Shown here: one piece after another, positions 1 to 50,548 of the stretch | How positions within the stretch are numbered: position 1 is the first letter of the stretch | Layout: each line of letters starts with the position of its first letter | NCBI GenBank assembly: GCA_965649765.1 | Contig: OZ287749.1 | Span: 58,590,001 to 58,654,000, forward strand | Reading direction: 5' to 3' | DNA: 64,000 bases | DNA from: Bispira polyomma | Taxonomy: Eukaryota | Notes under the pieces: model-generated | Database searches by the model: none | What the model saw: the letters and a program-made list of their open reading frames with translations, nothing else | Told to the model about the DNA's origin: nothing | Made by a program: the position numbers and the translations under genes

Positions 1-155
1 GAGATTGTTTTGTTTAAAAAAAACAATTTAGATGTTTCTTTGCAAAAATTCCAGTGATACCACCTACCTACTAACACTAACAAGAATATCCATTGCATCA
101 TTCACAAAGGACTAAGAGAATCCCAACTGCCATTAATAGGTGTGGCATAAAATAC

Positions 156-371
156 CTTGTTAACAAATTCTTTTCCATTATCAGTTATGATCTTCTTTGG
201 AGGGCCAAAAGTACACAGGAGGTCCTCAATTACCATGGATACCTCCTGAGCAGTTTTTGTCTTTACGGGCGTTGCCCAGACAAACTTGCTAAAAAGGTCT
301 GTTGCTGTGAAAATGTGTTTGTTGCCGTCTTCTGTTTCGGAGAGTGGCCCTGTGAGATCAATTCCAATGAT
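156..371 (-). CDS. Gypsy-integrase-like gene exon 4 (rve catalytic core with the first two catalytic Asp)
   Basis: ttgaag|IIGIDLTGPL...ATDLFSKFVWA...PKKIITDNGKEFVNK|gtattt, 216 nt. It joins exon 3 to give the canonical PWQ-IIGIDL motif. The gene continues beyond the window start. Confidence 0.92.
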
Positions 372-1159
372 CTTCAAGAAAAACCACAAATGATTTATGA
401 TTAGTACTTATAAATTATAAGATATTTTGCATAATGTGAATGGTTAAACGACTTAAACCTGGATTGTTGAAGGTCATTCAGATTAACTGTGAATGACTAA
501 CTCACATTGGATTGCTGGCCACTTACCTTGAACATTTATATCATGGTTAGTTCATAGCCCTCCTTATGATTCCAAATGTGACTTTTCGGTGTACAAATAA
601 CACCTGAATGTGCATGAAATCTCACTCAGTCCTACAAGTTTGGGATACGAAAAATATTCTTAGGAAATCATCATTGGAATTTTTTTTAAATGTCTACCAT
701 AAATTACTTTTAGACTTACAGTAACACTCTATGGATGATTCCATGGCTGACCTTTAAAGAGCTTCAAGGTCGAATTTCTGTCAATTTATAAAGGACATTT
801 ATATGTATTCAAAATATTATTCATAAGAACATCCAACTATCATATGGGAGAATAGGGCCAAAATGTGCGCAAAAAACCTACAAATGGCAAAATGGTTATC
901 ATTGACCTTGAAATAGAAGCTCAAGGTAAAAAATGCATAGGCTTCCTGTCCTTGCCCATCGGCGCAATGAGATTAAACTACTGTATCCCTGACTTTGTCC
1001 ATGGATAAAACTATGGATATTTTGTCCTGCTATACAAGTAGCATAACTGCTGGCTAATAAAACATACTAACTTATTATTAAATAAATATAGTGAAAATAT
1101 TGAAAGATCAATAAACCTTAATGTCAAAAATAAGTAAGAATAAATTTTGGACAGCAAAC

Positions 1160-1249
1160 CTGCCAGGGCTCCTCTGTGACAATTGGACGCAACTCCTTGC
1201 TAGCCGTTTTCAACTTCTCCAGCTTCTGACATCTGTCACAAAGTTTAAT
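1160..1249 (-). CDS. Gypsy-integrase-like gene exon 3 (CxxC of the zinc finger)
   Basis: Not in the ORF track. tttcag|IKLCDRCQKLEKLKTASKELRPIVTEEPWQ|gtttgc, 90 nt, phase 0/0. Confidence 0.9.
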
Positions 1250-1439
1250 CTGAAATGAATCTTTAAATGTTATAAAATACTATAAATACTACTTTAAAAT
1301 CATTTAGCATGTGATACCTCACTTTTTTTTGCAAGGAATCAAAAACATGTTGTAACATAAACACAAATCTATTTGCCTATTACTGCTATTAACTATTGCC
1401 AATGTGTCACACCCATAAATGGAAAAAAAAATTGATGCA

Positions 1440-1850
1440 GTTTACAGCCTGGGTTCTTCCAAATGTCAACCAATTGTTCACTCTCAGTTCCCTAAGGGAG
1501 AATACTAGCCATGCTGCCACATACGGCACACAAACTGACACCGACTATCAATTTTGAGCTTTAAAAATGCTTCTATTATTATTACATTAGCAGCCAGATA
1601 CCCATGTATAGACCTGGGTGAAGAGGGCCAACTTTGTGTGAAGTACCTTGTCCAATGGTACAATCTCCAGGGCCAATATTCATAAAGGGACTTAGCCAAG
1701 TCTTAGGCTTAAATCTAACACAAAAGTATACTGATTTAAACCTAAGACTTCACTAAGTCTCTTTGTGAATTCAGGCCCTGGCCTACAGCGAGGCTCTAAC
1801 CTAGACCCTCAAATCCAAAGTTAGACATTCTAAACGCTGGGCCACAGACA
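1440..1850 (-). mobile_element. tRNA-derived SINE interrupted by a MITE
   Basis: A/B-box-like head at 1850-1782. Body ttggacaaggtacttcacac...ctcttcacccagg...atgggtatc is typical of conserved-domain SINEs. Confidence 0.55.
1668..1780. mobile_element. Palindromic MITE (GG(G/C)CnnTATTCA-type TIR, CWG flanks; Harbinger-like)
   Basis: Near-perfect fold-back. Family copies at 21731-21845, 23400-23466, 40031-40144 and 40160-40225. Confidence 0.75.
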
Positions 1851-1991
1851 GCTCTGTCGATTGGCCACAGAAACTAAAAGTATATTGAATATAATAAGTA
1901 GGTAATTTGCCTGAAAAACCCATGGCTTCCTATACCTTCATTAACAGACTAACCCAAACATATATGCACTAACACAAGAAACTCAATTTAC

Positions 1992-2176
1992 CCAGTTTTT
2001 GACATCATTAACCATCATCCTCCAAAAGTAGGCACTTTCCAGACGTTGCAGCGTCTTAGTGATACCTGAATGGTTACTGGCATCATGACATTCACACAAT
2101 GCCTTTTCTATTTCTTCTACGGTGGTAAGAACCATCCTCGACCTCCCCTTCTTGTCTATATAAAACAGTCTGCTAC
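1992..2176 (-). CDS. Gypsy-integrase-like gene exon 2 (first half of the H2C2 zinc-binding domain)
   Basis: Acceptor tcag|GT in phase 1. Translates as GSRLFYIDKK...CHDASNHSGITKTLQRLESAYFWRMMVNDVKNW. Donor TGG|GTAAAT in phase 0. Confidence 0.9.
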
Positions 2177-3073
2177 CTGACAGTAAAAAGTTTGCTTTGC
2201 AAATCATTTTTTTTATTGAGAGGTAAAAAAACTAAAGATTATAAATCTTTAAAAATTTAAACTCAATTAAAGCAATTAAATAGGGAAAGAAGACACATTT
2301 ATGGCCTGATCCTACTAACAAAGAAACACTACATAATACATGACAGATTTGAAAAAAAGACGCATCTAAATTGTATTATATAACAGATTCATGAAAAGGT
2401 AACACTGCATACACTGACAGATTCCACAATGAATGGTCATGGAATATTAAAGAAACTTAACTTATTATACAGGCAAGGCTATGGGTAACAGACTACCAGT
2501 TGTAAAAGGTTTATAAATTATTATGGGCTGTACTTGTCAAGTACTTACACGGACAGACATTACAAGTTGTAAATAAAGTTCGGACTTCCTTCTGTCTACT
2601 ACCAATGATTTTTAGCTCTGGCTGTGATTTTATTTGCGTTATAATGAAAATAAACTCTAAAAAAAGTCTAGATATATTATATAAGGGTCTATTAGTATCA
2701 ACAAAGCCATGACCTTGAAGGGACAAAAAACAACAAAAAAAAAACATGAATAATGTCACCATCACCTTCAGTATAAACTAATTTCAGTAAGATATAGTCA
2801 CAAATACAGCCGTAATAAAGATTGAAATGTATGGAGAAAATTAACACCCCACCACCAGCTTCAGTGTATCAGAGAGTTAGATGAAATAAAATTTTCAAAA
2901 AAGACAACCTTAATTAAATTTGAAATAGTGTATAAAAGTCAAATCTTGAAAAACAAAAAAAAAATAAGGTCACCACCACCTTCGATTCAAACACAAAAGA
3001 CTGCAAAATGGCAGAAAATGAATCTGCTTTAAAGAGACTCCCTTTCATACAATTTTAAAAAGTGACAGAAATA

Positions 3074-3164
3074 GCATTTCCAGCAAGTATGCTCTACCGC
3101 TAAGCTACAGGAATAAAATGACATCCCGGTAGGAGTTGAACCCACGACCTCACTGCTGGAATGC
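3074..3164 (-). other. Circularly permuted tRNA-like sequence
   Basis: Minus strand order: AGGTC, T-arm (GTGGG-TTCAACT-CCTAC), acceptor 3' strand, 7-nt linker, acceptor 5' strand, TA, D-arm (GCTT-AGCGGTA-GAGC). It is closed by a terminal inverted repeat that extends the anticodon stem. Confidence 0.65.
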
Positions 3165-3351
3165 AAGCTCCAGAAATATATACCACAATTAAATTTACAC
3201 CAAAAGTAGTTTGAAAAGTTAATTACTTTTCAGGAATATGATTCACATAACAATCTAAAAGGGTAACAAAATGAAAAGTCAAAGTCTCCAACAGCATCTT
3301 CATCATATAAATAAAGTTACATCAAATAGTTATTCATAACAATATAATCTT

Positions 3352-3925
3352 AACTAGAACTAGTGCATCAGAGAAACGATGCATATTTGTATCCACCAGA
3401 AAGACAGAGCACCCTATGTATGAAGCACCTAAGCTATGGCTACCTTCATCTGAGCTTGAATGAGGGGTCCAAGGTCAAACCTGACCACATCAGAAGATTC
3501 CTAGCCCATGATTTCTTATAGGTAGACTTCACATGCCAAACCTCTAGGACCAATAATAAGGAAGATATAGGCACTTTTAAAGTTTGCTATGTGGGGTACT
3601 TTGACACTCTGTGGATGCTTGTAGAGGAAATATATATCTGTTATACATATCACCTATGAAGAGATTAAACCTTCTAGTTACGACAACCAGACAGTAGAAA
3701 AAGATGGATAATTTTCAATGAAATGCTCATAGCGGTTATCTTGTTCTTCAGAATGAGGTTTATTTTAGTGGCAGAGAAGCTTACCCCTCAATAAAGATAA
3801 CCTGCAAATTTGGTGAAGCTAGCTGGTCTAGTTTTCTGCTGAAAGTGTTAAGGGCGAAAAGCTCTTGGCGGCGGCAGCGTAGCAAACGCTAAACCAAAGT
3901 ATCCACCAGATCGGTGAATACAATT
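3352..3925 (-). mobile_element. Non-autonomous Helentron-type element (HINE/DINE-1-like)
   Basis: Subterminal repeat GTATCCACCAGA at 3389 and 3899, with an inverted partner GGTGAATAC at 3913. Short (GCC)n microsatellite near the 5' end. 3' hairpin TGCATC-N8-GATGCA followed by CTAGTT on the minus strand. Inserted in AT-rich sequence. Confidence 0.7.
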
Positions 3926-4886
3926 AATATTAAAATAATTGATGAAAGTAAAAGCTTGCAAATGAAAAATAATGTCACCACCAGCATAATTACATAATAA
4001 AGTTAACTAAAATACAAAAGCAGAAATAAATCTAAAATTAAGGTTGAAATAAATGATGAAAGTCAAAGCTTGCAAATTAAAATAATGTCAGCACCACCTT
4101 CATTATACAATAAAGTTAACTAACTAATATTAGCAGAAATAAATCTACGATTAAGATTGTTAAAATGTTACAAAATTCTTTAAATAACAAGACCACCCCT
4201 TATTATCTCCCACCCAAAAAAAATGTAAAACAAGCTTAGAATACAGTTCAATACACATGTTAGATTGAATGTCTACTCAAATTACTTCTTCATAACACAC
4301 TGTAGCTAAAACAAATGTAGAAATAAAGTCCTCAAGCTTGTACTTTGTTGGTGCTTAGACTTAAGGACCACCAGACGCTAGAATAGCAAGCTTGTAAGCT
4401 CAAGCTGACAAAAGCTTAACTAGTTTAAATTTTATGAATCCCATTTTTGTCATAAAATGCCAAGATATATAAAACTTTTTTGGTAAGGCACTTGTAGCTC
4501 TGTAACAGGGATGAAATCATGACATCAGTCAGCCACTGCGCATGACCTCAGGATTTAGTAAGACCTATAAATGAAAACAAAGTCTACATATTAAATGTAT
4601 ATTATATATATTTATACAGAATCGTGATAGCCATATTAAATAATTCATGTGTTATAGTAAAGCTACACATGTCATTACAAGGGTGTGCAGATCCTTACCT
4701 ACCAAGAAATAGTATGCCTTGTTTACATTTCAAAATGTCACTGCAAAGTGTGCTAAGAAGCATGTCATCTAGTATTTTATGATGTAATTATAGTTAAGTA
4801 TTAAAGAGGCGTTATATTGTAACAATCGATAATCACTAAAAAGTGGCCGAAGTAACATCCACTGATGTATAAGGAATGAGGGGATG

Positions 4887-5129
4887 TATCCTCGCACCTC
4901 CAATTATCGATCACGTAAGCGGAATAATATATAAAATGTATTTTAACAAGTTAATATCTTTTTTTACCTCCCATTTTCTTAATTTTTGTTGGAGATTACT
5001 GAAGTTTTGTTTTTATTTCGAACTGCCAAATGATCAACGCTAAATTGCGGTCACATGACCTAGTATAAAACGGTTATTTTGTTGCTGATCAATAATAGAA
5101 AGTGATCGATAACAGGAAGTGTGACTATA
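4887..5129. mobile_element. ~243-bp MITE, copy 1
   Basis: Imperfect ~28-bp TIRs (tatcctcgcacctccaattatcgatcac / gtgatcgataacaggaagtgtgactata). Near-identical copy at 11895-12138. Confidence 0.8.
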
Positions 5130-5304
5130 TTTATTTTTACCAGATTCTATCTCTATATATGCCGATTTTGATTTACAACGTTTTGCTTATGGAGGCCGTC
5201 AGTATATCAAAGCATCAGCGAGGGCTGAATACTCGGTCTGTCCCTTTTCGTGATTCCATCGGCAAAATGTCAGCAAGGAATCACGCTAAATAGGGACAGA
5301 ATAT

Positions 5305-8300
5305 CTAATCTAATCTAACTTTTATAGCACTTAATCTTTGTACAACAAATTCTAAGGCGCAACAAACCCAAAACGTTAATCGAAAATCAAAAATAGTGGG
5401 CGGATGGAAGTCGTAACCAGGGAGACTACCGTAAATGGTTGCGACGGCTAAGGTGGAAAAGCCTGTTCAAAAAGATGGGCCTTCAGCTTACTCCTGAAAG
5501 AGGAGAAAGTTTGAGCCAGGCGAACATGATCAGGTAGGCTGTTCCAAATGAGGGGGCCGTCATGAGCTAGGCAGTGATTGAACTGAACTTTGGATTTGTG
5601 GATGCGAGGGTCGAAAGTGGGAATGTTAAGGTATAATTTATCAGGGTTACTGCGCCTTGTCCTGACTGAGCATGTATATTTGGATAGATGGGGGCTAAAA
5701 TAAGTGGGTAATCCAGAATTTAGAAATTTATATATTATTGTTGCTGTTTTGAAAGCAACACAATATTTAATTGGAAGCCAGTGCAGTGACTTTAGTACAG
5801 GAGTAATGTGGGAAAATTTAGAAGTTTTGGTCACAATACGTACAAACGAGTGTTGGATATTCTGAAGGCGTCTGAGATCACTACGAGATAACGAATGAAA
5901 CAAAGAGTTGCAGTAATCAAGCCTGCTGCTGACCAAAGCATTGGCAACAGTGATTGCAGTGGATTTGGAAAGATAGCGTCGAATCCGCCTGAAATCAGTG
6001 AGGCCAACAAAACATGATCTACACACCGCTGTGACATGGTTAGAGAAGGAGAATTCAGAGTCGAACACCCCACCCAGGTTTCGTACTTTGTCAGCTGGAG
6101 AAAACCTGCTGCCAAGAATGTCAAGTGGAAAACAACAGGACAATTTTTCCCGTTGCGACTTGGAGCGAAACAAAATAAACTCAATTTTCTCAGGGTTCAG
6201 CTTGAGTTTATTTGCTGCCATCCAGTGTTGTACATCAACAAGGCAGTTCTGTAAGGAAGTGAAAGCTGCCTTGGCAGAGTCAGGTGTAAGGTGGATATAC
6301 AGTTGGGTATCATCAGCATAGAAGTGAAAGTTTATGTTTTTGTATGCAGCAATAATCTTGCTGAGTGAAGTGATGTACATGGAAAACAAAATGGGACCCA
6401 GGACGGAACCTTGGGGAACACCAAATTTTAACCATGTTGGGTCGGATAAGATATTGCCAATTTTGACTGATTGGAATCTATCAGACAAATATGCAGTGAA
6501 CCACTTAAGCGCCATACCGCTGATACTGAACCAAGACGATAGGCACTCAAGAAGAACTTTGTGATTAATAGTATCAAAGGCTGCTGACAGATCCCGCAGT
6601 ACTAAGGCAGTAGGCATACCTTTGGATAAAGCTGTATGAACATCATTTTTGATGCAGAGAAGTGCAGTCTCAGTAGAATGACCACTTTTGTACGCTGACT
6701 GATACTTGTTGGACAGATTGCTGATGTCAACATGTTGTTTGATCTGTAAGGCAACCGCGCGTTCTACCAACTTAGAGATATAGCAAAGGCCTGAGACAGG
6801 ATGGTAATTTTTCAAGTCAGCCTTTGGTAGAGAAGGTTTTTTTATTAAAGGAGTGACAATGGCCTTTTTAAAATCATCTGGAAAGACGCCATTTACCAAC
6901 GAGAGGTTGATAAGTTTTGTGATTGAGGGCAATAAAATGTCAATACATTCCTTAACAAGGAATGTGGGCCACGGATCTAGCAAGCAAGATTTTACGGGTG
7001 ATGCCAGTATAGTTTTCCTGACTTCATCAACAGTTACTGTGGAGAAACAGTTGAAGACGGTTGGTGGAGCTGTTGGTAAAGGGGCATTTGGGGCGGCTAA
7101 TGTAAAACCGTCACAGATTCTGGTAATTTTATCAGTGAAAAAAGTACTAAAAATGTTTGCCAGTGATTTGGTATTGCAATTTTCGGGTGGTATAGTCTGT
7201 TTTTTACGGTGGAGGGTGCTATTTAGCTTTTGCCAAAGTTTCTTCGGGTCACCCTCGCTTTATGATATCATGTTGGCATAGTAGGCACGTTTTGAGTCAT
7301 TTATAGTGTTGTTGCACCGGGTGATCCATTGGCGTAGTCTAGATCTATTTGCAGTAGGTTTGTTTCGGCGCCATGTTCGTTCGGCTTGTCTGCGCAGCAT
7401 CTTCATTTCACGATAATTACTGGTGATCCACTCAGGTGTCAGCTTCTTCAATGTCTTTGATTTACATGGCGCATGGCGTTCTATAAGAGACTGCAGGTCA
7501 GCACAGTACTGTGTGTATAGGTCAGTGGCATTATCAGCAGGAGACTTGACGAAGGCCGTATCTGCCAACTCTCGTCTAAGGTCAGACATATTGATTTTTT
7601 GAAATTGCCGAAAAGTGATTTGTGTGACATCAAAATATGGTGGGGAGGGAGCATCAATTTCACAGGATATTGAAAAATGATCACTGATGCAACCAATGTT
7701 TTTTATGTTTCTGATACTATTGAAATCAGTCGGAGTTAGCAAGCAGTCTAGTGTATGCCCAGGAATATGGGTAGGGAAATTTATGTGTTGGATGAGATTG
7801 CAAGATTCCAGAACTGTGGAAAACCGATTACTAATTCCAGATGCGGTGTCTATGTGAATATTAAAATCCCCACAGAATACAGTAGGGAGGGTAACGAGCA
7901 AGTAAACCCAACAAAAGACATGAATTCTTCGAAAAATGTAGTGAGATTTGAGCCAGGAGGCCGATAAACTGTTGCAAAATTTAAACAGTGGTTTTTCCAG
8001 TGAGCAGAGACAATGATGAGTTCGAAAGATGTAAAAACTTGGTGGAGCAACTAATCGACATTCATAGTTTTTCTTAATAAAAATCAACCCCCCCCCACCC
8101 TGTTTACCTACACGAGGGGTATGGAATAGCTGAAAGTCAACTGGAGTAAGTTCAGAGAGGAATGATGGAGTATCAGAACTCCTAATGTGTGTTTCTGTGA
8201 TGCCAAAAATATCTATGGAGGATGAGTCGATCACATCGGCTATGACAGGGCCTTTATTCCGCAATGAGCGGGCATTTCCAAATCCGAACTGGATTGGGCC

Positions 8301-8349
8301 AGGGTTGCTAGCGATATCACCTGCCAGTAGGATTGTAATAAGTTTGAAT
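5305..8349 (-). mobile_element. L2/CR1-group non-LTR retrotransposon (family A): APE + RT ORF, 5'-truncated and disrupted
   Basis: APE motifs GNARSLRNK, GITETH, GDFNIH, HTLD and SDHF. RT motifs DLSAAFDT, GVPQGSVLGP and YADDTQLY; C-terminal HITPVLKSLHWLP. (TTAGA)n tail. Candidate 6-bp TSD GAATAT at 5299-5304 and 8350-8355. Premature TAA at 7260-7262 where copy 2 has CAA, and frameshifts near 7900-8050. Confidence 0.93.
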
Positions 8350-8376
8350 GAATATTCGATCTATTATTCATCATAC

Positions 8377-8511
8377 CCTTCTCCACATAATTTTTAGATG
8401 CCTTTTTGATCGTATCTCGTTGACTCAGAGGCAGTTCTTCTGGAAATGTCTTAGAAAGCAAGTACTTCCGTACACAAGCAAAATAAAAAGCACTTTCTAG
8501 TTTTTTCAACA
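8377..8511 (-). CDS. Gypsy-integrase-like (Ginger1/GIN-type) gene, coding exon 1
   Basis: Translates as MLKKLESAFYFACVRKYLLSKTFPEELPLSQRDTIKKASKNYVEK-G and ends at donor G|GTATGA in phase 1. It resembles the YL...P......R..I...A..Y N-terminus of GIN/Ginger integrases, and the phase matches the exon at 2176. Confidence 0.75.
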
Positions 8512-10679
8512 TCTTTGTCAGTGTGGTAGATCTCTCAAAATAACCGCCCAAACTTGGGTCTATTTTATACGATTAAATGTGAACAAATGTATCATATAAT
8601 GACAGTTCATTGATATAATTACCAAAATCCGAATGCGTAATATACCAAATTATCACATATCTGTACATATATAACCAATTCATCGTTCTAGCTTGAAAAT
8701 CAATTTATTAAATTAGCAGAATAAAATATTATCAATGATTAATCAATCGGGTTCACTTTTACAATTCGGCTGTTTTGACCAAAAAATATCCCCAGACAAT
8801 ATAAGTATTAGACATATTGGTGACATGCGCAAGAATCCCTTTTCAGTAAGAAACCATTCACGTGACAACGGCGAGCTAGTTCGGGGGACTTTTTAAAAAT
8901 ATCAAACATGTTTGATATTTTTTTCGACCTCTATGTTTGCCCCGTTTTCGCCCCGGACGTAGATGAACATGCCCTGGTCCTCAAAATCGGGGCAGTCGGG
9001 GACCAAAAAACCATAGTGGAACACCCACGTTAGATAGGACTCAATGACATAGGACCGCCATTATAAGTGCCCATTCAAGCCACTATATCTGTCCGTACTT
9101 GGGTACCCAGACTGGGATAAAACCTGGGTTCCTGAATGAATGTTTTGCCGACAAAGCACACTGGTACAATAGTTTTGTCATTGTAGATATCATATTGATT
9201 AAACGTTTGGGCCATTGTTACTAAAACTAGTACATACTGGGGGTCTTAATATAAAATAGTGACCTTGTGGTTAAATCCATTTACTAAACTAATCACTTGA
9301 TTGTGATTGCAGTACAAATCCTACTGACCAGTGATATTTTACATAGGAAAGTATGGCATCTACTTGCTGTAGGTCGAGTGGTTTATAATAAAAAATATAT
9401 TAGAGTCAAGTATATTTTTATAGCATCAAGAAATATTGCATAGCGACATACTACTGTTACTACCTAATATACCACAGGTTTCAAAATTTCTCAATTGAAT
9501 ACTCAAGGGCTGCCTCAAATCAATAATAAATTAACTAAAGTTTTTGTACCATATAATCCCTGAGCACAGACATATTCTTACATGTTGCATGACTGTTTGG
9601 GAGCTCTACCAGTCATAAACCTCTAGTATAAACTGTGGCGTTAAAATAAAAAAAATTTAAACATTAAATAAAAGCTTAAAAAATCATATATAATGTACTC
9701 ATGTACTTCGCTTTCTTAATTCAGGCCACTTCCGTTATTAATACATTTTCAATTTGAGAGTAAACATTTTAAGTTGACCGTACAACTTGGGCTTAAGATA
9801 ACAATCAATCTATCAGTTAAAGTGATCTTAAATTAAAATTAAACTCCAGTTTGAGTCAAAACATTGTAGATTGATGGTGATCTTAAATTAGTTTTTGTCT
9901 TCGGTTTAATTCAGAATCTAGTGACATTTAACTCAGCTTAAGGCTCACCTTAAATTTATGATATATTTTTTGATATACAATGCTCATATATGTTGCTAAG
10001 GTGTGTTTTAACATATTTTATAATTAATATTATATTATTAATATTATACAGATGTGAAAATATATTTATTAGTCTTAGATGCATAACTTTTTAAATAAAT
10101 GTATATCGCACATTCTTTGATTTTTTCCTGTGTCCTTGGGTTGCGATCTTGTTTAACCCTGAAACTGTGATTGCTGTTACTCATGGTGCTTGAGTTCCAT
10201 GTCTACTATAATTATTTATTTTAGTTTAAGCTCTTTCTTGTTGTATCATTCAAATTCCTACTTGTTGTGGAGTCTGTGAATGGTGTTTGCTAAGTCTATT
10301 CATTTTATATTAGCTACCCTCTTCACCCCCCTCTTCCTAGACTTGCTTACAAGTCTTTACTGTTGGTGAAGCACTGTATGACTGCATTTTAAACAGTTCC
10401 TATTCCATTCAAAAGGTGTCAGCACTAGTGTTTTTATAACTGTCAGTTTCTTTATTTTATCCCATACAGGGATATAGAGTAAAAGTCATAATGCTCTCAT
10501 TGAAGGACCTTGCACAAGGTCAACCCTTGTCATCTATTTCCGAATGCAAAGGTCTCCTACTGTACATAAATTTAGTATTATTTATTAGTAATGACAAATA
10601 TATACAACAAATGCGATTTATTGCCCATAAAATTACATAGCTCTCATCAAAATCAAACTGTTCATATTAATATATTTTC

Positions 10680-13266: not shown

Positions 13267-14432
13267 GTTAGTTATTTTAGTGTCCGTGTTAGTTTGCATG
13301 CAGTACACACTTCAAAGGAACCTCTATTGTCTGAAGATTTTTTTTCAGATAATAGAATGTTCATATAAAATTAAAAACAAATTGTAAAACATAATACAAA
13401 AAACAAACCCCAAAATTATGAGAGTAAAAAACAGAAACAATTTTTTAAAATGCTTAAAATACTTGGATAAAATAGAACTATAAAACAAAAGTTCGACAAT
13501 TATCTGTTGTAAAGGTCAATGGTTATTCCGGGACCAAGTTAAGTGATAAATGTAATCAGACATAAAATACTGATGCACGATTGTAATGGACTATTGCTAA
13601 TGAGATATTTGTGGAATATTGTTTCTGTGACCACTAACCATGTGCAGCCAAATTCAAAAGACAACCTGAAAAGATGATGTTGTGGATTTGGTTTGTCAAA
13701 AAATAATTGACTTTCATATTTGTAGTTTGAAGCATCTGCAAAGATAATGCTGTGCAGTGTCGTCCTTAACACTGTACTAAGGAAGTTGGCCAGTGATATA
13801 CAACTGTAATATAATATGTGATTATAAATTGCTGTGTGTTTATGAGTAAATATAATGGTACAAAAAGAATAGTTTACCAGGCAAAGTAAAAATAACTCTA
13901 CTGAGTGAATGGCCTGCTATCAAGTAAACTGGCTCACATGTCTTTGTATTTTATCCTTATCCACCATGCAGGAAGTCATTATGATGCCACTATATGAATT
14001 GGGCCAGTGGTCTCTGCACAAATACAAACTTAGCACCTGTATATATTTACAAAGTAAAACTGCTCTCATATAATGCTTGAGAGAAAATAACTTGAAGAAA
14101 GTGTAGCTATTAAGAAGCTTTAGTACAGTAAAAAAGCACACCTTTGTAATGGTTCCTATTTTGTAAAGCTAAAATATCAAAGTGGTAAGCACTAAAAAGT
14201 CAAACACTAGAAATTGATTTCAAATGGTCCACAAGTTTATCTAAATATGATTTTTTACAAACAAAAAAAGTTATTTTAAATAACATGTAAAAGTGGGATC
14301 GCATTCAATAGAGCCTATTTGGCAGCCCCTTCAGATAATAAGGTAGATGTAAAATATTTCAAAGTCTATTAAAGTTTACTTTACTGTGTTTTCTTTTTTA
14401 AACAATCTCTATATAATTTTCTATGTTTTTAG

Positions 14433-14814
14433 CACCAGCTCAACACTGAACGAAATAAGAAAGTTGACTAGACTTCGGGTGGTAGATAACAGTCGCATGG
14501 GTCATGTTGCCAACACTTCAGGGAAACCTGCCAAATGTATCCACATCTACAACAAAACTGGGGTGGGCACCTTGGGAGACAAGGTTCTGGTGGCCATTGG
14601 AGGGCAGAAGAAGCGGGCCTATATAGTGGGTGTGGTGAAGAAACAGAAACCCTTTATACCTAAATTTGACACCAACAACATTGTATTGATAGAGGACAGT
14701 GGGATGCCGACAGGCACACGAATAAGGGTACCAATCCCTTCAATGCTACGGAAGAAAAAGGACGCTAGAGCAGAATTTACAAAAATACTCTCTATAGCTA
14801 CCAAATTTGTGTAA
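14433..14814 (+). CDS. MRPL14: Mitochondrial ribosomal protein L14, coding exon 2
   Basis: tttttag|C completes phase 2. Carries the uL14m signature LTRLRVVDNS...IHIYNKTGVGTLGDKVLVAI...FDTNNIVLIEDSGMPTGTRIRVPIP...KILSIATKFV*. The spliced product is 145 aa. Confidence 0.95.
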
Positions 14815-20060: not shown

Positions 20061-21730
20061 GTGAGGTGTAAAATATCTGTATTGAGAATATAGGGATCCA
20101 GTAGATTTCTACATACAGTATAACCTTTATTATCTGAACATGTTGCGAGAGCAAGATTTCGTTCAGATAAAAGAAGGTTGATAAAACTATTGAAAAACAT
20201 CACTTTGAGAGATTGAAAATCAGTTGATAAAATCATATATTTGGCTATTATACGAGTTTGAATAATGGACGTTATACTGTATGTCAATTTAATTTAGTAT
20301 TTAATTTCTTTCACTTTTTTGGGGGAAGTGGTGGTTGCGGGTGGACTAAGAATGTGTATTTTAGTATAATTCTGTTTTTCTAAGGTTTGATGGTCCAGGT
20401 CCAATTCATAGATGTGGTGAAGTTTTATTTGTCCTGTCATGTGTGAGTTTTTGCATCTATATACTATCTAAAAAAGATGTGTCATGTAAATTTGACAGTT
20501 CAAAGCTCTCTCTTGTCAGTAGAGATGTTATGGAAAATATTTTGTATGCAAGGAAATTTTCTCGTGTTGGCTATGGTTATTTAGTTTGAAGATTATGAAG
20601 TGTGTACATGTAGTATGTTTGGTCTAAAATCTAATATTTCATGTGATCGTGCATGAGTTATACTGAATTAAGTATCAGGGAGAAGTGGTATATGCATTGC
20701 AGAATATGATAATTAGATAACAAATATAGCCAAAATGTACACATATCAGTGACACATGGAATATATATGTCTTGTCCTGTAAATATTTTAACATATGATC
20801 TAAAGTATACCTGTGCACTTAGTTTGGTTAGTTTCTATATACAGTACAAGTATATTCTGTATAAAAATGACCTGTGGCAAAATTTTATGCAACATTTGGT
20901 TACTGTGTACATCCTTACAAAATGTCTATTAGGCGACAGTGTCTATGACAAGAAAGTGTGCCAGTCTTTGCCTCTCCTGGGGGCCGTATTTACCCAAGGC
21001 CTAAAATTTAAACTCACAATTAATGGTCTCAAGGTCTGTCCTGCTGTATCTCTATTTCTGTGTACAGTAAAGATTTCTAAAATATGAATACTTATTTGAG
21101 TTCCTCACTAAATGCTCCATTAAATCAAATTGTGACATGTCTCGGTAAGTCCCATTAATACAAAACAATTTCTACAAGTGCAAGTTTGAGTTTAAGCATC
21201 AGTTTAAAACCTTTTGATAAATGCTCCCTATTATTTGTACAGTAAAGTGTATAAAACTTCCCACATATCTGAAATTCCCCACTTGATAAAATCCTTATAA
21301 AATAAATGTAATGGGCCCAAATTAAGTAAGGAATGAGTAGACCATCCTTATTATGAAAAAATATCTATGATTTTTAGAACCAAAGAGTAACCTTTTTTTC
21401 TCAGAATTGTCCAAGATTTTAAAGAGGCGCAGGGATTTTTGGATATATAGAAAATTGGAGATTCTTTACTCTTAGGTTTTCCACATAATTGAGTGTTTAC
21501 AAATACCCCCTATATACCAGATATAATAACCAGGTTAAGGGTAAAATAGATCAAAAAGATGATCATATGCCAGTGAATGGTTTAAAATAACTTTCTCATG
21601 ATACTGTAACATAAAAGGCAAGGGCACCACACTGCAAACAAGTGAAAAAAATCCTGGATATGCCCTTCTACCTTGCCCTATGTCCCCTCCCGAAATTTAT
21701 GTAAATCAGTTCAGCATTATTTGTGTAATC

Positions 21731-22327
21731 CTGGGCCTGTATTAACAAAGGGACTTACCCAAGTTTTAGGCTTAAAATCAAGCACAAAAGTATACTTATT
21801 TAAGCCTAAGACTTGGCTAAGTCCCTTCATGAATACTACTTGCCCAGGGCCCTCATTTACTAAAGTTCTTATACTTAGAATATTTCTTATACTTAGAATA
21901 AAAATCATTCTTATACTTAGAATAAGAATCATTCTTATACTTAGAAAATTTACTATTCTAAGAATATTGTTATTCTTATTCTTAGAATAAGAATTTTCTT
22001 AACTAAGAATTGTGAAAAGCAACACATAAGAATGCCAGGGGCCGTATTCACTAAAGTTCTTATAATTAAAATAAGAATTTTTGGTATTTACTGAAGTTTT
22101 TATTCCTAGAATAATTCTTATATTTAGAATTTTTGCTTATTCTTCGAAAATCTTCAAAGAATGAGCTTTGATTCTAAGAGTGGTCAAGACCTTACTTAAG
22201 TTAAGAAAAAGACATGACATTCTTTTGTGCAACTCTTAGCTAAGAAAATTCTTAGAATAGAAAATTTTCTAAGTATAAGAATGATTCTTATTCTAAGTAT
22301 AGGAACTTTAGTGAATACAGCCCCTGG
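21731..22327. mobile_element. Cluster of adjacent or nested Harbinger-like MITEs with internal TTCTTATACTTAGAAT repeats
   Basis: TIR ends at 21731, 21844, 22035 and 22327. A related element lies at 23867-24495. Confidence 0.7.
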
Positions 22328-23866
22328 TGACAAACAAACTAAAACCAACCAATAAAGATGGGCAAAAGCAAACAAAAAGTAATAAGTGATAACCAGTGAA
22401 ATAAATATGATTCACACTTTTAGATTAATAATAGAGATATACTGAACCATTAACATAACATAAAAATGATTTATTTGTGGTGAGCACCCTATTTATGTGA
22501 AGTGGATTAATCTATCATATGTGCAGCATTGTAAAAATAGTGGTAATATATTCAATGGAGAAGTCATTTTTCATGCATTATTAACTTTTTATAAACTATC
22601 TACACAGAATAGATGTCAAATCTATTAAATTGTACAAAGACTAATGTATGTCTTAATAAAACTGTTTGGTGGTGCTTCATAAACTAGTAAACTTTACTAT
22701 GTTTAGCTTTAAGAAGGGGTGAACATGTTGATTACCTCATGTAAGGTTACATGTTGTCTAATGTCTGTTGTTTTGTTGATTAGCTGGATCACACAAAAAA
22801 ATTAAAAACTAATTTTGATCAAACTTTGTCAAAGACCTCAAAACTATTAGGAATTGGAAGTTTTTGTCAAATAAGCTACTTCCTGATACAGATGGTCTAT
22901 GTGGAGGTTAGCGCTCAACTGAGTGCTTTTAAATCTTGTTAGGTTTACAACAAGGTATTTTCTCATTGACGAAAGTAACCTCTCTTGCATTAACCAAACT
23001 GTCTTTAAGAGAGATTAAACCCACAATATCCCCATCTATCAGTGGCAAATTGTAGATCTTTGTAACAAATTCAAAGGGGCGTTTTTTTTCTTTAATGTCT
23101 GTGTTTAAAAATGCAGTGGTAATATGATCTTAGTATTTGCTAGTATGGAGAGTAATCTTGTCTAGATTCATACTGTAGAATTCATACTCTGTGATGTAAC
23201 CGATAGACCCCCTTCATAAAAGTGATTGTATTTGCGGTTGCCTTAAACACAGTGAAACCTCTGTTATATGAATATGTTGGAAGAAAAATATCTGGTTTGG
23301 ATAGTAGAAGAGAGAAAGAATGTATATGGATTTATGTCATTTTTAACCACCTAACCCATCTCTCTAAACCCTCCCCCCCACACCCACTGACACAAGGGTC
23401 AGTATACTTTTGTGCTAGATTTAAGCCTAAGACCTGGCTAAGTCCTTTTGTGAATACAGGCCCAGGATTGTAGAGGTTCAGATAACAGAGGTTCTACTGT
23501 AGTGACCTTATCCGGATTTAAAATGTAAATATATTGATACATCAGAAAAAACTAGATTATGCAGTGGAATCTCTTTTATCCAAACATGCTGGTAGAGTAA
23601 GGTTTTGTTCGGATAATAGAATGTTCATAAAAAGAAGTGCAATTTTAGTGTAAATAAATGGGAAATTGAAAATTTGGAAGAATGAAACTGTGTTCATGAA
23701 ATCAAATACATTTGTATTTCGATAATAGAAGTTAGAATAATAGAGGTTCTACTGTAATTGATTATACTTATCTTATTCTAGCAGGACAAAAAATCCCAAA
23801 AATGAAAAAAACAATTAGTACCTATATTTGAAACCATGATATTCTTTAATTTCAAGGCTCTCAGGC

Positions 23867-39015: not shown

Positions 39016-40030
39016 GTGAATTTATAACTCTACAACAAGTGGACATTTAAGCTGAAAGAATATATTCACTTATTTTGAATTTTTTTGAGAAGTTCACTGA
39101 AATACTTTTCATATTGTCTTCATATTTTGCTCAAATATTATTTATTACAAGTTCAATATTCACCGTTTAATTATTTTTTACTATCCTAACTCATTAGCTA
39201 AAGTAAATTCCTGTTGAAAATTTTCACTTATACAGTAAAATGTTCTTGAAATTAACCAACTCAAGACATGAATTGTTTTGATGTAACAGTCAGTAGATTG
39301 TATTTTCATTTCACATGTTGAACACATGTTTTATATATGAATGTACATAGCCGGTAAATCATAATTCGATATATCTCATTACGTCCATAAAGGCTTTCCA
39401 AATAATGTGGCTACCAGTTTACATTATTTGAAAAATAACTATATTTCTTATAACATGTATATTTGGGTAAATTTTTTAATAAATGGAGCAAAGTGTATTT
39501 GTTGGAAATGTATACAAGTAGAAATGTACATTATTTTTCAATTAATTGCAATATGTGGCTAACTTTATTACCTATAGAGTTAAAATGTAGCCACATTATG
39601 TGGAAAAGTCTGTATTAACATATTCAATCAGTCAAAATAACTGGTAAATCTGCCTTAAGTTTGTTGTGTCCAAATACCAGGGAAGTAAGTACCAGTTTCC
39701 TGTATCTCTGTTGTTAGAACGAAGAGGGCGCCACTGCTCTGATGTTGGCATGTCAGAGGGAAGAGGAAGACCATGTCAGGGCCTTACTGGAAAAAGGGGT
39801 GAAAGATGCTGTGTTTTCATTATACCTTTATACGGCAGTGTGATAACCTTGCTCGAAGTGCCAAGTTATTCTTATTTTGACTGCACTTAAAGTACTCCTG
39901 ACCTAGTAACAGTATCACTGTCATTCCCCTAACCACTAGGGTTTTGGCACAGTCGGTACATGTATAAGTATACAGGTTATTCCCATTTCCCATATGTGTA
40001 CTTGATATTAGTTTTTGAAGAATACAGACC

Positions 40031-40225
40031 CTGGGGCAGTATTCACTAACAGACTTAAGCCAAGTCTTAGGCTTAAATTTAGAATACCTCTGTGCTTGAT
40101 TTATGCTTATGACTTGGCTAAGTCAGTTAGTGAATATGGGCTCTAGGATGAAATCTGGTATGCTTTTGTGCTAGATTTAAGCCTATAGAAGACTTGGCTA
40201 AGTCAGTTAGTGAATACGGCCCTGG
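40031..40225. mobile_element. Palindromic MITE plus a duplicated half copy
   Basis: Same family as 1668-1780. Confidence 0.7.
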
Positions 40226-42175
40226 ACTTACGGTATATTCTTCAATGAAGCTCAAACTCTGAACTCAAGTGAAGGCTACATGTAACTCCTGTATATGGGA
40301 GAACCTCTATTTTATGAACATCTTGGGAGAGTGAGAATTTGTTTGCATTTTAGTATGAAACATAGCAAAAAAAAGTTTAGCAGAGTGAAATTGAGTCCGT
40401 AATATCAAATATTTGGATAACAGAGGGTCAGATAATAGAGGTTCTGCTGTACTTGTGACTATTTATTTAAACAGAGCTTTCAGTGCTGAATTCCTATATG
40501 CATTCAGTGAGATTTTATGTGTCTTCCATCTCACCAGAGATATGGGGAATGTTAGAGTTGAGCTTGACCTTTTTGGAGCATACATTCCTTTAAGTCTTAA
40601 TATCTCTATAAGCAATAGTCAGTATGTTAATGTTGCACTGTTTTCCATTTTATCAGTGTTTTATATCTATCTATACCAATTAGCATTACTTTGCAGCTTC
40701 ATTTTATAACAAGGAACCCATTTTTTAAAGTTAGTAACAAGGGTTAACATTATATTAGGAATACTTCATGTTAATTGATAATGTAATTGATTTTAGTTTT
40801 CTGACTGGTTCAAAAAAAAAATGCTAGTCATACTACAAGTCATGCTATTATTAGGTGATTCTTGTCCTACATTCCTTGTAAATAATAGGTCCATCAAAAA
40901 AGGGTGAAAACAATGTTAAATAGCATGGAAAGTAAATATTTACCACATGTAAACTTTCTGATGAAATCAGAACAACCAATAGCTTGAAACCAATGGGCAA
41001 ATGACAGTGGTGTTTACTGAATAGTAACATGATCAAATAAGAACAACTCTCTCTCTGTCCCCTGCAGTGTCCATTACAGACTACATCCAATATTTGGCAT
41101 TGAAACAAGGAAGTGCAGTAAATGCCCTTCCTTCTGTGATTTTACCTACAACAAGGAAGGGGTCCTTGACAGACCTGTTTATGAACAAATAAAACTGTGT
41201 ATAGTTAATCAATGGTCATGATGTTTCCTAAGATACACATTGGACTGTAGTTCACTGTAAACAAATCATTTTCCTATGGCACTTAAATTGCTTGTAACAG
41301 AGCTAGATACCAGATAGTGTGTATATAGTTATTGTTTAGTGATGGCATATTTGTGTAACTGGGTAACAACACAGACTCCAGCCCTGTAATAAAGAATATC
41401 TTAGACTAGTGGAAAATACACTCGCTTAGGAACACAGAGGACCTGGGTTTAATCCCAGCCTGATGGAAAACCAGATACAGGCAGATAAATAGTGGCTCGG
41501 ATGAAAACGTAAAATGGCTGGCCTCTGTCATTGGGTCCTATCCCCAGTGTGGCAGGCTGAGTAATATATAGTTTGGGGACATTGATAAATGGTCATCCTT
41601 AAGCCCCTAGCTCTCTTCAGTTAGGAAAATGCCAGTTACTGATGCTGGTTGGCTGTATTTGGGCAGTCAGGAACAGGTTAATTAGAGTTTTGCATGGTAG
41701 ATAAAGATAGATAAATGCATTATTTATTTGAATACAAAATTGTAACAAACTTGATTCTAGCATGCACCATTCTTGACATTCTAAGATAGTGATATATTAT
41801 AAATATATACTGTGTATGTGTAAATCTTTCTATTCTATTCAACCTTGTGGGCACTAAACCTCCCACACATTTTGGAACTCAAAGTGCTGACAGTGCTTAT
41901 TATCAGTATTGCAGTTAATATGAGCTTAGTTGGTAAACTTTAATTAACATTTAAAAATACATATTTTCTAATAATTACATACAGTAGGACCTCTATTATC
42001 TGAACATGTTGGGAGAACAAGACTTAGTTGGGTAACAGAAGGTTTATAAATTAAAAAGAAGAGCTTTTCAGTATAGACGAACAGGATAGAGTGTAAGATT
42101 TGAAGAGTGAACATGTGTTCAGAAAATAAATATTGGTATAATTAGAGGGTATATTCTACATTTTGTTTTTTTCAG

Positions 42176-48459: not shown

Positions 48460-50548
48460 AATCTAATCTAATCTAGTCGTACTTTTATAGCGCTTAATCT
48501 TTGTACAACAAATTCTAAGGCGCAACAAACCCAAAACGTTAATCGAAAATCAAAAATAGTGGGCGGATGGAAGTCGTAACCAGGGAGACTACCGTAACTG
48601 GTTGCGATGGCTAAGGTGGAAAAGCCTGTTCAAAAAAATAGGCCTTCAGCTTACTCCTGAAAGAGGAGAAAGTTTGAGCCAGGCGAATATGATCAGGTAG
48701 GCTGTTCCAAATGAGGGGCCATCATGAGCTAGGCAGTGATTGAACTGAACTTTGGATTTGTGGATGCGAGGGTCGAAAGTGGGAATGTTAAGGTATAATT
48801 TATCAGGGTTACTGCGCCTTGTCCTGACTGAGCATGTATATTTGGATAGATGGGGGCTAAAATAAGTGGGTAATCCAGAATTTAGAAATTTATATATTAT
48901 TGTTGCTGTTTTGAAGGCAACACGATATTTTATTGGGAGCCAGTGCAGTGACTTGAGTACAGGAGTAATGTGGGAAAATTTAGAAGTTTTGGTCACAATA
49001 CGTGCCAATGAGTGTTGGATATTCTGAAGGCGTCTGAGATCACTACGAGATAAGGAACGGAACAGAGAGTTGCAGTAATCAAGCCTGCTGCTGACCAAAG
49101 CATTGGCAACAGTGATTGCAGTGGATTTGGAAAGATAGCGTCGAATCCACCTGAAATCACGGAGGCCAACAAAACATGATCTACACACCGATGCGACATG
49201 GTTAGAGAAGGAGAATTCAGAGTCGAACACCACATCCAGGTTTCGTACTTTGTCAGCTGGAAAAAACCTGCCGCCAAGAATGTCAAGTGGAAAACAGCTG
49301 GACAATTTTTCCCGTTGCGACTTGGAGCCAAACAAAATAAACTCAGTCTTCTCAGGGTTCAGCTTGAGTTTATTTGCTGCCATCCAGTGTTGTACATCAA
49401 CAAGGCAGTTCTGTAAGGAAGTGAAAGCTGCCTGGGCAGAGTCAGGTGTAAGGGGATGTACAGTTGGGTATCATCAGCATAGAAGTGAAAGTTTATGTTT
49501 TTGTATGCAGCAATAATCTTGCTGAGTGGAATGGTGTACATGGAAAACAAAATGGGACCCAGGACGGAACCTTGGGAAACATCAAATTTTAACCATGTTG
49601 GGTCGGATAAGATATTGCCAATTTTGACTGATTGGAATCTATCAGACAAATATGCTGTGAACCACTTAAGTGCCATACCGCTGATACCGAACCAAGACGA
49701 TAGGCACTCAAGAAGAACTTTGTGGTCAATAGTATCAAAGGCTGCTGACAGATCCAGCAGTACTAAGGCAGTAGGCATACCTTTGGATAAAGATGTATGA
49801 ACATCATATTTGATGCAGAGAAGTGCAGTCTCAGTAGAATGACCACTTTTGTACGCTGACTGATACTTATTGGACAGATTGCTGACGTCAACATGTTGTT
49901 TGATCTGTAAGGCAACCGCACGTTCTACCAAGTTAGAGATATAGCAAAGGTAATACAGGACGGTAATTTTTCAAGTCAGCCTTTGGAAGAGAAGGTTTTT
50001 TTACTAAAGGAGTGACAATAGCCTTTTTAAAATCATCTGGAAAGACGCCATTTATCAACAAGAGGTTGATAAGTTTTGTGATTGAGGGCAATAAAATGTC
50101 AATACATTCTTTGACAAGGAATGTGGGCCACGGATCTAGCAAGCAAGATTTTACGGGTGATGCCAGTATAATTTTCCTGACTTCATCAACAGTTACTGTG
50201 GAGAACCAGTTGAAGACGGTTGGTGGAGCTGTTGGTAAAGGGGCATTTGGGGCAGCTAATGTAAAACCGTCACGGATTCTGGTAATTTTATCAGTGAAAA
50301 AAGTACTAAAAATGTTTGCCAGTAATTTGCTATTGGAATTTTTGGGTAGTATAGTCTGTTTTTTACGGTGGAGGGTGCTATTTAGTTTTTGCCAAAGTTT
50401 CTTCGGGTCACCCTCGCTTTGTGATATCATGTCGGCATAGTAGGCACGTTTTGAGTCATTTATAGTGTTGTTGCACCGGGTGATCCATTGGCGTAGTCTA
50501 AATCTATTTGTAGTAGTTTTGTTTCGGCGCCATGTTCGTTCAGCTTGT
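48460..50548 (-). mobile_element. Second, more 5'-truncated copy of LINE family A, in ankyrin intron 7
   Basis: Near-identical to 5305-7389, including the 3' UTR and (TTAGA)n tail. The RT is broken by frameshifts (ORFs 49933-50559, 49359-49931 and 48646-49383). Confidence 0.93.

What the first reader, a model, noticed from the sequence alone, without database searches (positions are those of the whole stretch)
3074..3164. Circularly permuted tRNA-like cloverleaf (3' half before 5' half) in an intron
Seen: the minus strand reads GCATTCCAG-CAGTG AGGTC GTGGG-TTCAACT-CCTAC CGGGATG tcatttt ATTCCTG TA GCTT-AGCGGTA-GAGC A TACT(T)G-CTGGAAATGC. The T-arm, variable loop, D-arm and U8-A9 spacer are canonical, and 5-6 acceptor pairs form, but the B box precedes the A box. 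The acceptor stem is closed by a 7-nt linker. The anticodon stem has no loop and instead continues into ~9 more base pairs formed by the two ends. Known: permuted tRNA genes broken at the anticodon loop occur in Cyanidioschyzon, some green algae and an archaeon; I do not know of them as an animal feature. Inference: this may be a permuted-tRNA-derived mobile element or a tRNA-mimic processing signal (RNase P/Z or TSEN substrate). It lies sense to the integrase gene's first intron. The two ends are complementary rather than direct repeats, which argues against a simple junction between two tandem SINE heads.
Basis: partly seen in the sequence, partly recalled or inferred. Interest (0 to 1): 0.8.

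Follow-up and report, generated by a model that had tools for sequence, protein, structure and literature searches.

The report
Swapped-half tRNA module in animal transposons
An invertebrate genome carries at least 150 copies of a tRNA-shaped sequence with its two halves in swapped order, mostly at the joints of repeat units in mobile DNA, where it may mark cut sites for the cell's tRNA-trimming enzymes; such swapped tRNAs are known from algae, an archaeon and bacterial Y RNAs, and no RNA evidence could be obtained here.

Summary
The 91-nt module is real: T-arm, acceptor stem closed by a 7-nt loop, then D-arm. It lies in the inferred first intron of a young Ginger1-like DNA transposon (about 55 copies, 98-99% identical). 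It is not a one-off: the genome holds at least 150 matches in several sequence families, most outside this transposon, typically as direct repeats (pairs 1.7 kb apart at 10 sites, 227-nt tandem arrays, 620-nt units). Both flanks of the window copy are pieces of the 620-nt unit, so this copy is the junction of a decayed head-to-tail array whose unit starts with a tRNA 5' half and ends with a 3' half. It is not an algal-type permuted tRNA gene (no bulge-helix-bulge, no canonical anticodon arm) and not a YrlA Y RNA (no Ro60 motif, no Ro60 gene nearby), though it has the YrlA topology. Best reading: an RNase P/RNase Z cut site that releases unit-length RNAs, decaying in this copy (45%); main rival: a passive joint of Pol III-type repeats (30%). 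No reads, no second animal species, no double-sided covariation. No earlier scan finding matched it. Side find: candidate permuted tRNA genes in phage and giant-virus-like contigs.

The parts
3074..3164 (-). Permuted tRNA-like module (family F1): 3' half, 7-nt linker, 5' half, closed by a 14-bp terminal stem
   Evidence: (57.9 bits)
3129..3145 (-). T-arm, B-box
3108..3128 (-). Acceptor stem (5 of 7 pairs) closed by linker 3121-3115; inferred RNase Z and RNase P cut region
   Evidence: the cutting is inference
3091..3107 (-). U8-A9 and D-arm, A-box
3156..3162 (-). Anticodon-loop remnant on the 3'-half side (UCC in anticodon position, non-canonical loop), paired by the downstream arm
2749..3114 (-). 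Start of the downstream, truncated 620-nt unit (81% to unit bases 1-336 of L012)
3115..3353 (-). End of the upstream 620-nt unit (97% to unit bases 381-620)
3922..4148 (-). Diverged middle of the upstream unit (80-84% to unit bases 255-466), with about 113-nt sub-repeats
2177..8376 (-). Inferred first intron of the transposase gene (GT-AG, phase 1); holds the module, a LINE at about 5300-8360 and other insertions
   Evidence: no RNA data
8377..8512 (-). Inferred first coding exon of the Ginger1-like transposase
   Evidence: weak match to N-termini of homologues
1992..2176 (-). Exon with integrase H2C2 zinc finger
1160..1249 (-). Exon completing the zinc finger
156..371 (-). Exon with integrase core (rve)
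8854..8871 (-). 5' end of the transposon: 14-bp imperfect terminal inverted repeat (starts TGT at 8867) and 4-bp target duplication CCGT; the other end lies about 17 kb left of the window

Best explanation
The module is the joint between two head-to-tail repeat units, each of which begins with a tRNA 5' half and ends with the matching 3' half around an insert in the anticodon arm (shown for this family). In a read-through transcript the adjacent halves can fold into acceptor stem, T-arm and D-arm, so RNase Z and RNase P would cut on either side of the 4-7-nt linker and release unit-length, tRNA-bracketed RNAs; copying such RNAs back into DNA end to end would give the terminal direct repeats and tandem arrays seen (inferred). 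The role would be that of the hammerhead ribozyme in retrozyme repeats, played by host tRNA enzymes. The window copy is a passenger in one Ginger1-like family, with a partly decayed acceptor stem, not a part of the transposition machinery.
For: Unit structure: a whole 620-nt unit between two modules in L012; three more F1 loci have the same spacing; both window flanks match parts of the unit. Direct repetition in other families: F3 always two modules 1690-1722 nt apart (10 of 10 sites), arrays of period 225-229 nt with up to 6 detected units, groups spaced 488/1602 and 339. In the part of the pattern left free, the stem-side bases are shared by F1-F3 while the linker differs; F3 has a 7/7 acceptor stem with discriminator plus CCA in the loop, which animal tRNA genes do not normally encode (own knowledge). 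Precedent: M. smegmatis YrlA, same topology with a 7-bp stem, is cut by RNase P and gains CCA (PMC4201824); RNase P and Z need mainly acceptor stem and T-arm, and a tandem-duplication origin of permuted tRNAs has been proposed (PMC3978253). Passenger status: no model hit near the sister Ginger family at 51% identity and none in fish or metagenome homologues.
Against: No transcript or cleavage data. No change on both sides of an acceptor pair among the animal families; F1 has two broken pairs, F2 a bulge, F4 a shifted register, which fits decay as well as selection. The cloverleaf is a minority fold in prediction. Box conservation is inflated by how copies were found. CCA at that place can be chance (1 in 64 per family) or a prokaryotic or viral legacy. 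No reverse transcriptase partner, primer site or target duplication was shown for the units, since the flanks of F2-F5 could not be read.
Confidence: 0.45

Rival explanations
1. Passive joint: the units are tRNA-derived Pol III-type repeats (A box at the start, B box at the end) amplified at the DNA level; only the boxes matter and the permuted fold has no function.
For: Boxes are better kept than acceptor pairing in F1 and F4, and both have a T-run in the linker that could end Pol III transcription. This animal keeps ordinary tRNA genes in tandem arrays. Ordinary close tRNA-tRNA joints score as high on my model as true closed modules. Helenus elements keep tRNA boxes without tRNA function (PMC10886601).
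Against: Linkers are uniformly very short; single joints with B box before A box are no promoter yet persist in several families; the 620-nt unit holds long internal T-runs that Pol III could not cross (sequence).
Confidence: 0.3
2. A captured viral or bacterial permuted tRNA or Y-RNA-like RNA, kept by large mobile elements as a tRNA-shaped decoy against host defence.
For: The same topology occurs in phage contigs, next to Ro60 (TROVE) genes in three, and in a giant-virus-like contig found with an F2-type pattern. In both the viral and the animal copies the anticodon-loop sequence lies on the 3'-half side. F2 and a further family share an element spanning 13-75 kb.
Against: The viral hits were selected by pattern and the shared letters are common tRNA consensus. 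No Ro60 motif in F1 or F2, no TROVE gene near any copy, no viral polymerase or packaging ATPase hit in the F2 or F3 sites (best candidates only).
Confidence: 0.15
3. A DNA-level signal: B-box sites that bind TFIIIC and insulate or position the carrier transposon.
For: The B box is intact in every family and single modules lack promoter order.
Against: Does not explain the D-arm, U8-A9 spacing or paired acceptor strands.
Confidence: 0.06
4. A true permuted tRNA gene matured by the splicing endonuclease through a circular intermediate, as in algae.
For: Gene order and a short intervening sequence match the algal arrangement; the rejoined halves pass ARAGORN.
Against: No bulge-helix-bulge; no break point yields a canonical anticodon arm; acceptor end mismatched.
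Confidence: 0.04

Closest known systems
YrlA bacterial and phage Y RNA, tRNA-like domain (Rfam RF02553; PMC4201824)
   Same: T-arm, loop-closed acceptor stem, D-arm in this order inside a longer stem; full-model match (31 bits here, up to 41.6 for F2).
   Different: Below the gathering score of 69; no Ro60-binding motif; no Ro60 gene nearby; sits in animal mobile DNA as repeats. The paper states the domain is not apparent in metazoan Y RNAs.
Circularly permuted tRNA genes of algae and Thermofilum pendens (PMC3978253)
   Same: 3' half, short intervening sequence, 5' half.
   Different: No bulge-helix-bulge, no canonical anticodon arm, multi-copy in transposons, animal host (the review lists six algae and one archaeon).
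Retrozymes
   Same: A processing site repeated once per unit in terminal direct repeats or 170-400-nt tandem arrays.
   Different: The site is a tRNA mimic needing host enzymes, not a hammerhead ribozyme; mobility of the units is not shown.
Helenus tRNA-containing TRIMs (PMC10886601)
   Same: tRNA-like sequence in repeated ends of a mobile element (F3 pairs).
   Different: The paper describes promoter boxes A and B and mentions no permutation; its elements are under 1 kb; LTR features of F3 were not testable.
Ginger1 DNA transposons (PMC2836005), the carrier
   Same: TGT ends, CCGT/CCGG target duplication, H2C2 plus DDE integrase, protease-like and PHD tail, introns.
   Different: 19-26 kb long with only a 14-bp inverted repeat (published: 2.6-7 kb, 40-270 bp); the paper mentions no tRNA.

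Membership tests
Permuted tRNA gene (algal/archaeal) | 3' half before 5' half with short intervening sequence | tested here: met
Permuted tRNA gene (algal/archaeal) | Bulge-helix-bulge at the joined termini | tested here: not met
   continuous stem with single-base bulges
Permuted tRNA gene (algal/archaeal) | Rejoined halves give a canonical tRNA | tested here: not met
   ARAGORN calls a tRNA, but no break point 26-38 gives a paired stem with a canonical loop; no Rfam tRNA score could be computed on the rejoined form
Permuted tRNA gene (algal/archaeal) | Circular intermediate and mature tRNA in vivo | not testable with these tools
YrlA Y RNA | tRNA-like module with closed acceptor stem | tested here: met
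YrlA Y RNA | GNCGAAN(0-1)G Ro60-binding motif | tested here: not met
   absent in F1; F2 at chance level; F3 not tested
YrlA Y RNA | Ro60 gene adjacent | tested here: not met
   TROVE hits on C4 and C6, nearest copy about 540 kb away
YrlA Y RNA | Rfam gathering score | tested here: not met
   31-41.6 against 69; phage copies beside TROVE also reach only 39-44
Retrozyme-like mobile RNA | One processing site per direct or tandem repeat unit | tested here: inconclusive
   periodicity shown; processing not shown
Retrozyme-like mobile RNA | Self-cleaving ribozyme | tested here: not met
   no ribozyme family among Rfam matches at window 1-8000
Helenus TRIM | LTRs with primer site, polypurine tract and target duplication | not testable with these tools
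Ginger1 (carrier) | TGT ends and 4-bp CCGG/CCGT target duplication | tested here: met
Ginger1 (carrier) | H2C2 and DDE integrase with Ulp1/OTU/PHD tail | tested here: met
   Pfam H2C2, rve, weak PHD; the Ulp1-type catalytic motif was seen by eye only
Ginger1 (carrier) | 40-270-bp terminal inverted repeats | tested here: not met
   14 bp, imperfect

The most novel reading that the evidence does not exclude
A family of animal mobile RNAs whose ends are the two halves of a tRNA, cut to unit length by RNase P and RNase Z and copied back as terminal or tandem repeats, possibly descended from permuted tRNA genes of viruses.
Probability: 0.3. Interest if true: 0.85.

Novelty: new variant of a known kind. 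Interest (0 to 1): 0.58.

Why it matters
The papers read list permuted tRNAs only in algae and one archaeon and say the YrlA tRNA-like domain is not apparent in metazoan Y RNAs; my searches of the paper library found no report from an animal, which is limited to open-access text. If the module is cut, it is a new way for mobile DNA to borrow tRNA end-processing and a natural, compact processing cassette. If it is inert, it still shows the duplicated intermediate proposed for the origin of permuted tRNA genes, in many copies. The question is directly testable with short in vitro transcripts.

Tried and rejected
Chance or one-off truncation: rejected. General Ginger feature: not found in fish, metagenome or same-genome sister elements; the closest outside relative (L176/L181/L182) could not be read as far as intron 1, so it is untested. 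Y RNA-Ro60 module: motif and gene tests negative. Host elements of F2 and F3: searches for this family's ends (listed for C1-C6 only), integrase, protease exon, H2C2, MULE, KDZ, two polymerase families and A32 gave no hit assignable to them (only best candidates are scored, so absence is not shown). My phage-trained model does not tell Y-RNA-like modules from ordinary tRNA-tRNA joints, so its scores are not evidence of viral origin, and covariation in its alignment is inflated by selection. Zero variable sites in the module among 29 copies was discarded, because those copies were picked for identity there. A first constrained energy of -19.4 came from a wrong constraint and was replaced by -27.6.

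Full report
Observation. ARAGORN sees no tRNA in place but accepts the rejoined halves. The only Rfam family over these bases on this strand is YrlA, 31 bits, E=0.0012, gathering score 69. The four-arm fold costs 3.3 kcal/mol more than the best rod, so the cloverleaf is plausible but not the predicted main fold.

The carrier. The module lies in the inferred first intron (8376-2177) of a multi-exon transposase with H2C2 and rve domains and a protease-like/PHD tail. The element has TGT...ACA ends, a 14-bp inverted repeat and a CCGT target duplication, which fits Ginger1 except for length and repeat size (PMC2836005). About 50 copies of its exons are 95-100% identical, and the 30 module copies fetched all sit in the element. 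The large protein search was used once, because the word search returned one fragment and full-length relatives were needed. Those relatives, mostly fish GIN-like genes, have no module in the DNA read, and no model hit lies near a sister family in this genome. Earlier scan notes call the host an annelid; I did not test that.

A family of modules. A B-box-then-A-box pattern gives 86 matches and none for the control: 55 of this type (F1), 12 F2, 17 F3, 2 F4. T-arm and D-arm are nearly the same, the linkers differ. F3 has a perfect 7-bp acceptor stem with CCA right after the discriminator base; F1 has 5 of 7 pairs; F2 has a bulge; F4 pairs only in a shifted register. No pair changes on both sides. 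F2, F3 and F4 are not near this transposon's ends or integrase exon. Spacing is the striking part: F3 comes as two modules 1690-1722 nt apart at all 10 sites; other copies form arrays of period 225-229 nt; F2 sites have a further family 13-75 kb downstream on the same strand at seven loci, so they ride in a large multi-copy element.

The window copy is a joint. Four F1 loci have two modules 620 nt apart. In L012 the unit runs from the tRNA 5' half to the 3' half plus linker. The window's downstream flank matches unit bases 1-336 (81%), and its upstream flank matches bases 381-620 (97%) and 255-466 (80-84%). The unit's first 253 bases differ by 10% from the next unit in L012, far more than the 1-2% between transposon copies, so the repeat predates the spread of the transposon.

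What it is not. There is no bulge-helix-bulge, the defining signal of algal permuted tRNAs (PMC3978253), and no break point restores a canonical anticodon arm. It is not a YrlA member: no Ro60 motif in F1 or F2, and no TROVE gene nearby. These two motif tests used a gap pattern; one chance-level match printed 40 genome letters at C10, which I used only to note that the anticodon-loop remnant lies on the same side as in F1.

How it most likely works. Shown: topology, copy number, periodic arrangement, joint structure in F1. From published work: a YrlA with a 7-bp closed acceptor stem is cut by RNase P and gains CCA, while those without 7 bp are not cut; RNase P and Z read mainly acceptor stem and T-arm. 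Inferred: such joints let host enzymes cut read-through transcripts into unit-length RNAs bracketed by tRNA halves, and copying those RNAs gives terminal and tandem repeats, as hammerheads do in retrozymes (own knowledge). By the 7-bp criterion F3 is the best candidate and the window copy a poor one, so it is probably decaying. I put this at 0.45 against 0.30 for a passive joint of Pol III-type repeats, 0.15 for a captured viral decoy RNA, 0.06 for a TFIIIC site and 0.04 for a real tRNA gene.

Outside relatives. An F1-F4 pattern found nothing in metagenomes; an F2-type pattern found one contig, giant-virus-like, with a permuted module that rejoins to tRNA-Lys. Phage contigs hold more, some just upstream of Ro60 genes. 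They show that the architecture is widespread in viruses, not that the animal copies came from them, since ordinary tRNA-tRNA joints score equally.

Limits. After that I sent from the window only letters outside 2600-3700; patterns were F2-type and share generic tRNA box letters with F1. No second animal species was obtained.

Verdict. Real, non-random and, as far as the open literature searched shows, undescribed in animals; function unproven. New variant of a known kind; interest 0.58.

Noticed in passing
L183:128-185, L125:9570-9628, L055:5847-5906, L074:5882-5947, L113:1417-1476, L134:9018-9077, L154:976-1037: Permuted modules in phage and giant-virus-like contigs that rejoin to canonical tRNAs (Lys, Thr, Ser, His) with the break near 28/29-29/30 in the anticodon stem: candidate permuted tRNA genes in viruses; none of the 20 papers listed for that search used the term.
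   Followed up: partly
L134:9285-10670, L154:2-913, L160:3818-5563, L091:9919-11364, L074:4373-5755, L055:6211-7602: Such modules lie just upstream of TROVE genes, or near DUF2828+DUF7788 genes, and score only 35-44 bits on YrlA: likely missed Y RNAs; DUF2828/DUF7788 proteins may be Ro60-like partners.
   Followed up: partly
L037-L044 (G000:C4:34650400-34723540), L045-L050: Ginger copies often occur as direct-oriented pairs to quadruples 54-65 kb apart with a shared spacer of about 35 kb holding actin-like and DIRS-like sequences; on C4 one CCGG duplication flanks the whole transposon-cargo-transposon unit, as in a composite transposon.
   Followed up: partly
G000:C4:39033406-39034455: Intronless TROVE (Ro60-like) reading frame of 566 codons.
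   Followed up: no
G000:C5:17839237-17888210, C11:3632558-3680079, C12:34324307-34371661: Unidentified multi-copy element of at least 45 kb carrying two families of permuted modules; one copy lies inside an intron of a host family-B DNA polymerase gene on C10.
   Followed up: partly
window 1659-1787, 21724-21849, 23399-23472, 40029-40226: Dispersed palindromic element of about 115 nt with several copies in the window.
   Followed up: no
window 5300-8360 and 48466-50548: LINE with endonuclease and reverse transcriptase frames, present in intron 1 of the transposon copies read; a second copy at 96% identity in the window.
   Followed up: no
window 14353-14811; 19626-54008: Ribosomal L14/L23-family frame and ankyrin-repeat exons of host genes on the plus strand.
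   Followed up: no
G000:C2:38240520-38323324: Tandem array of 14 units of 6317 bp, each with two integrase H2C2 domains in a 1645-codon open frame.
   Followed up: no
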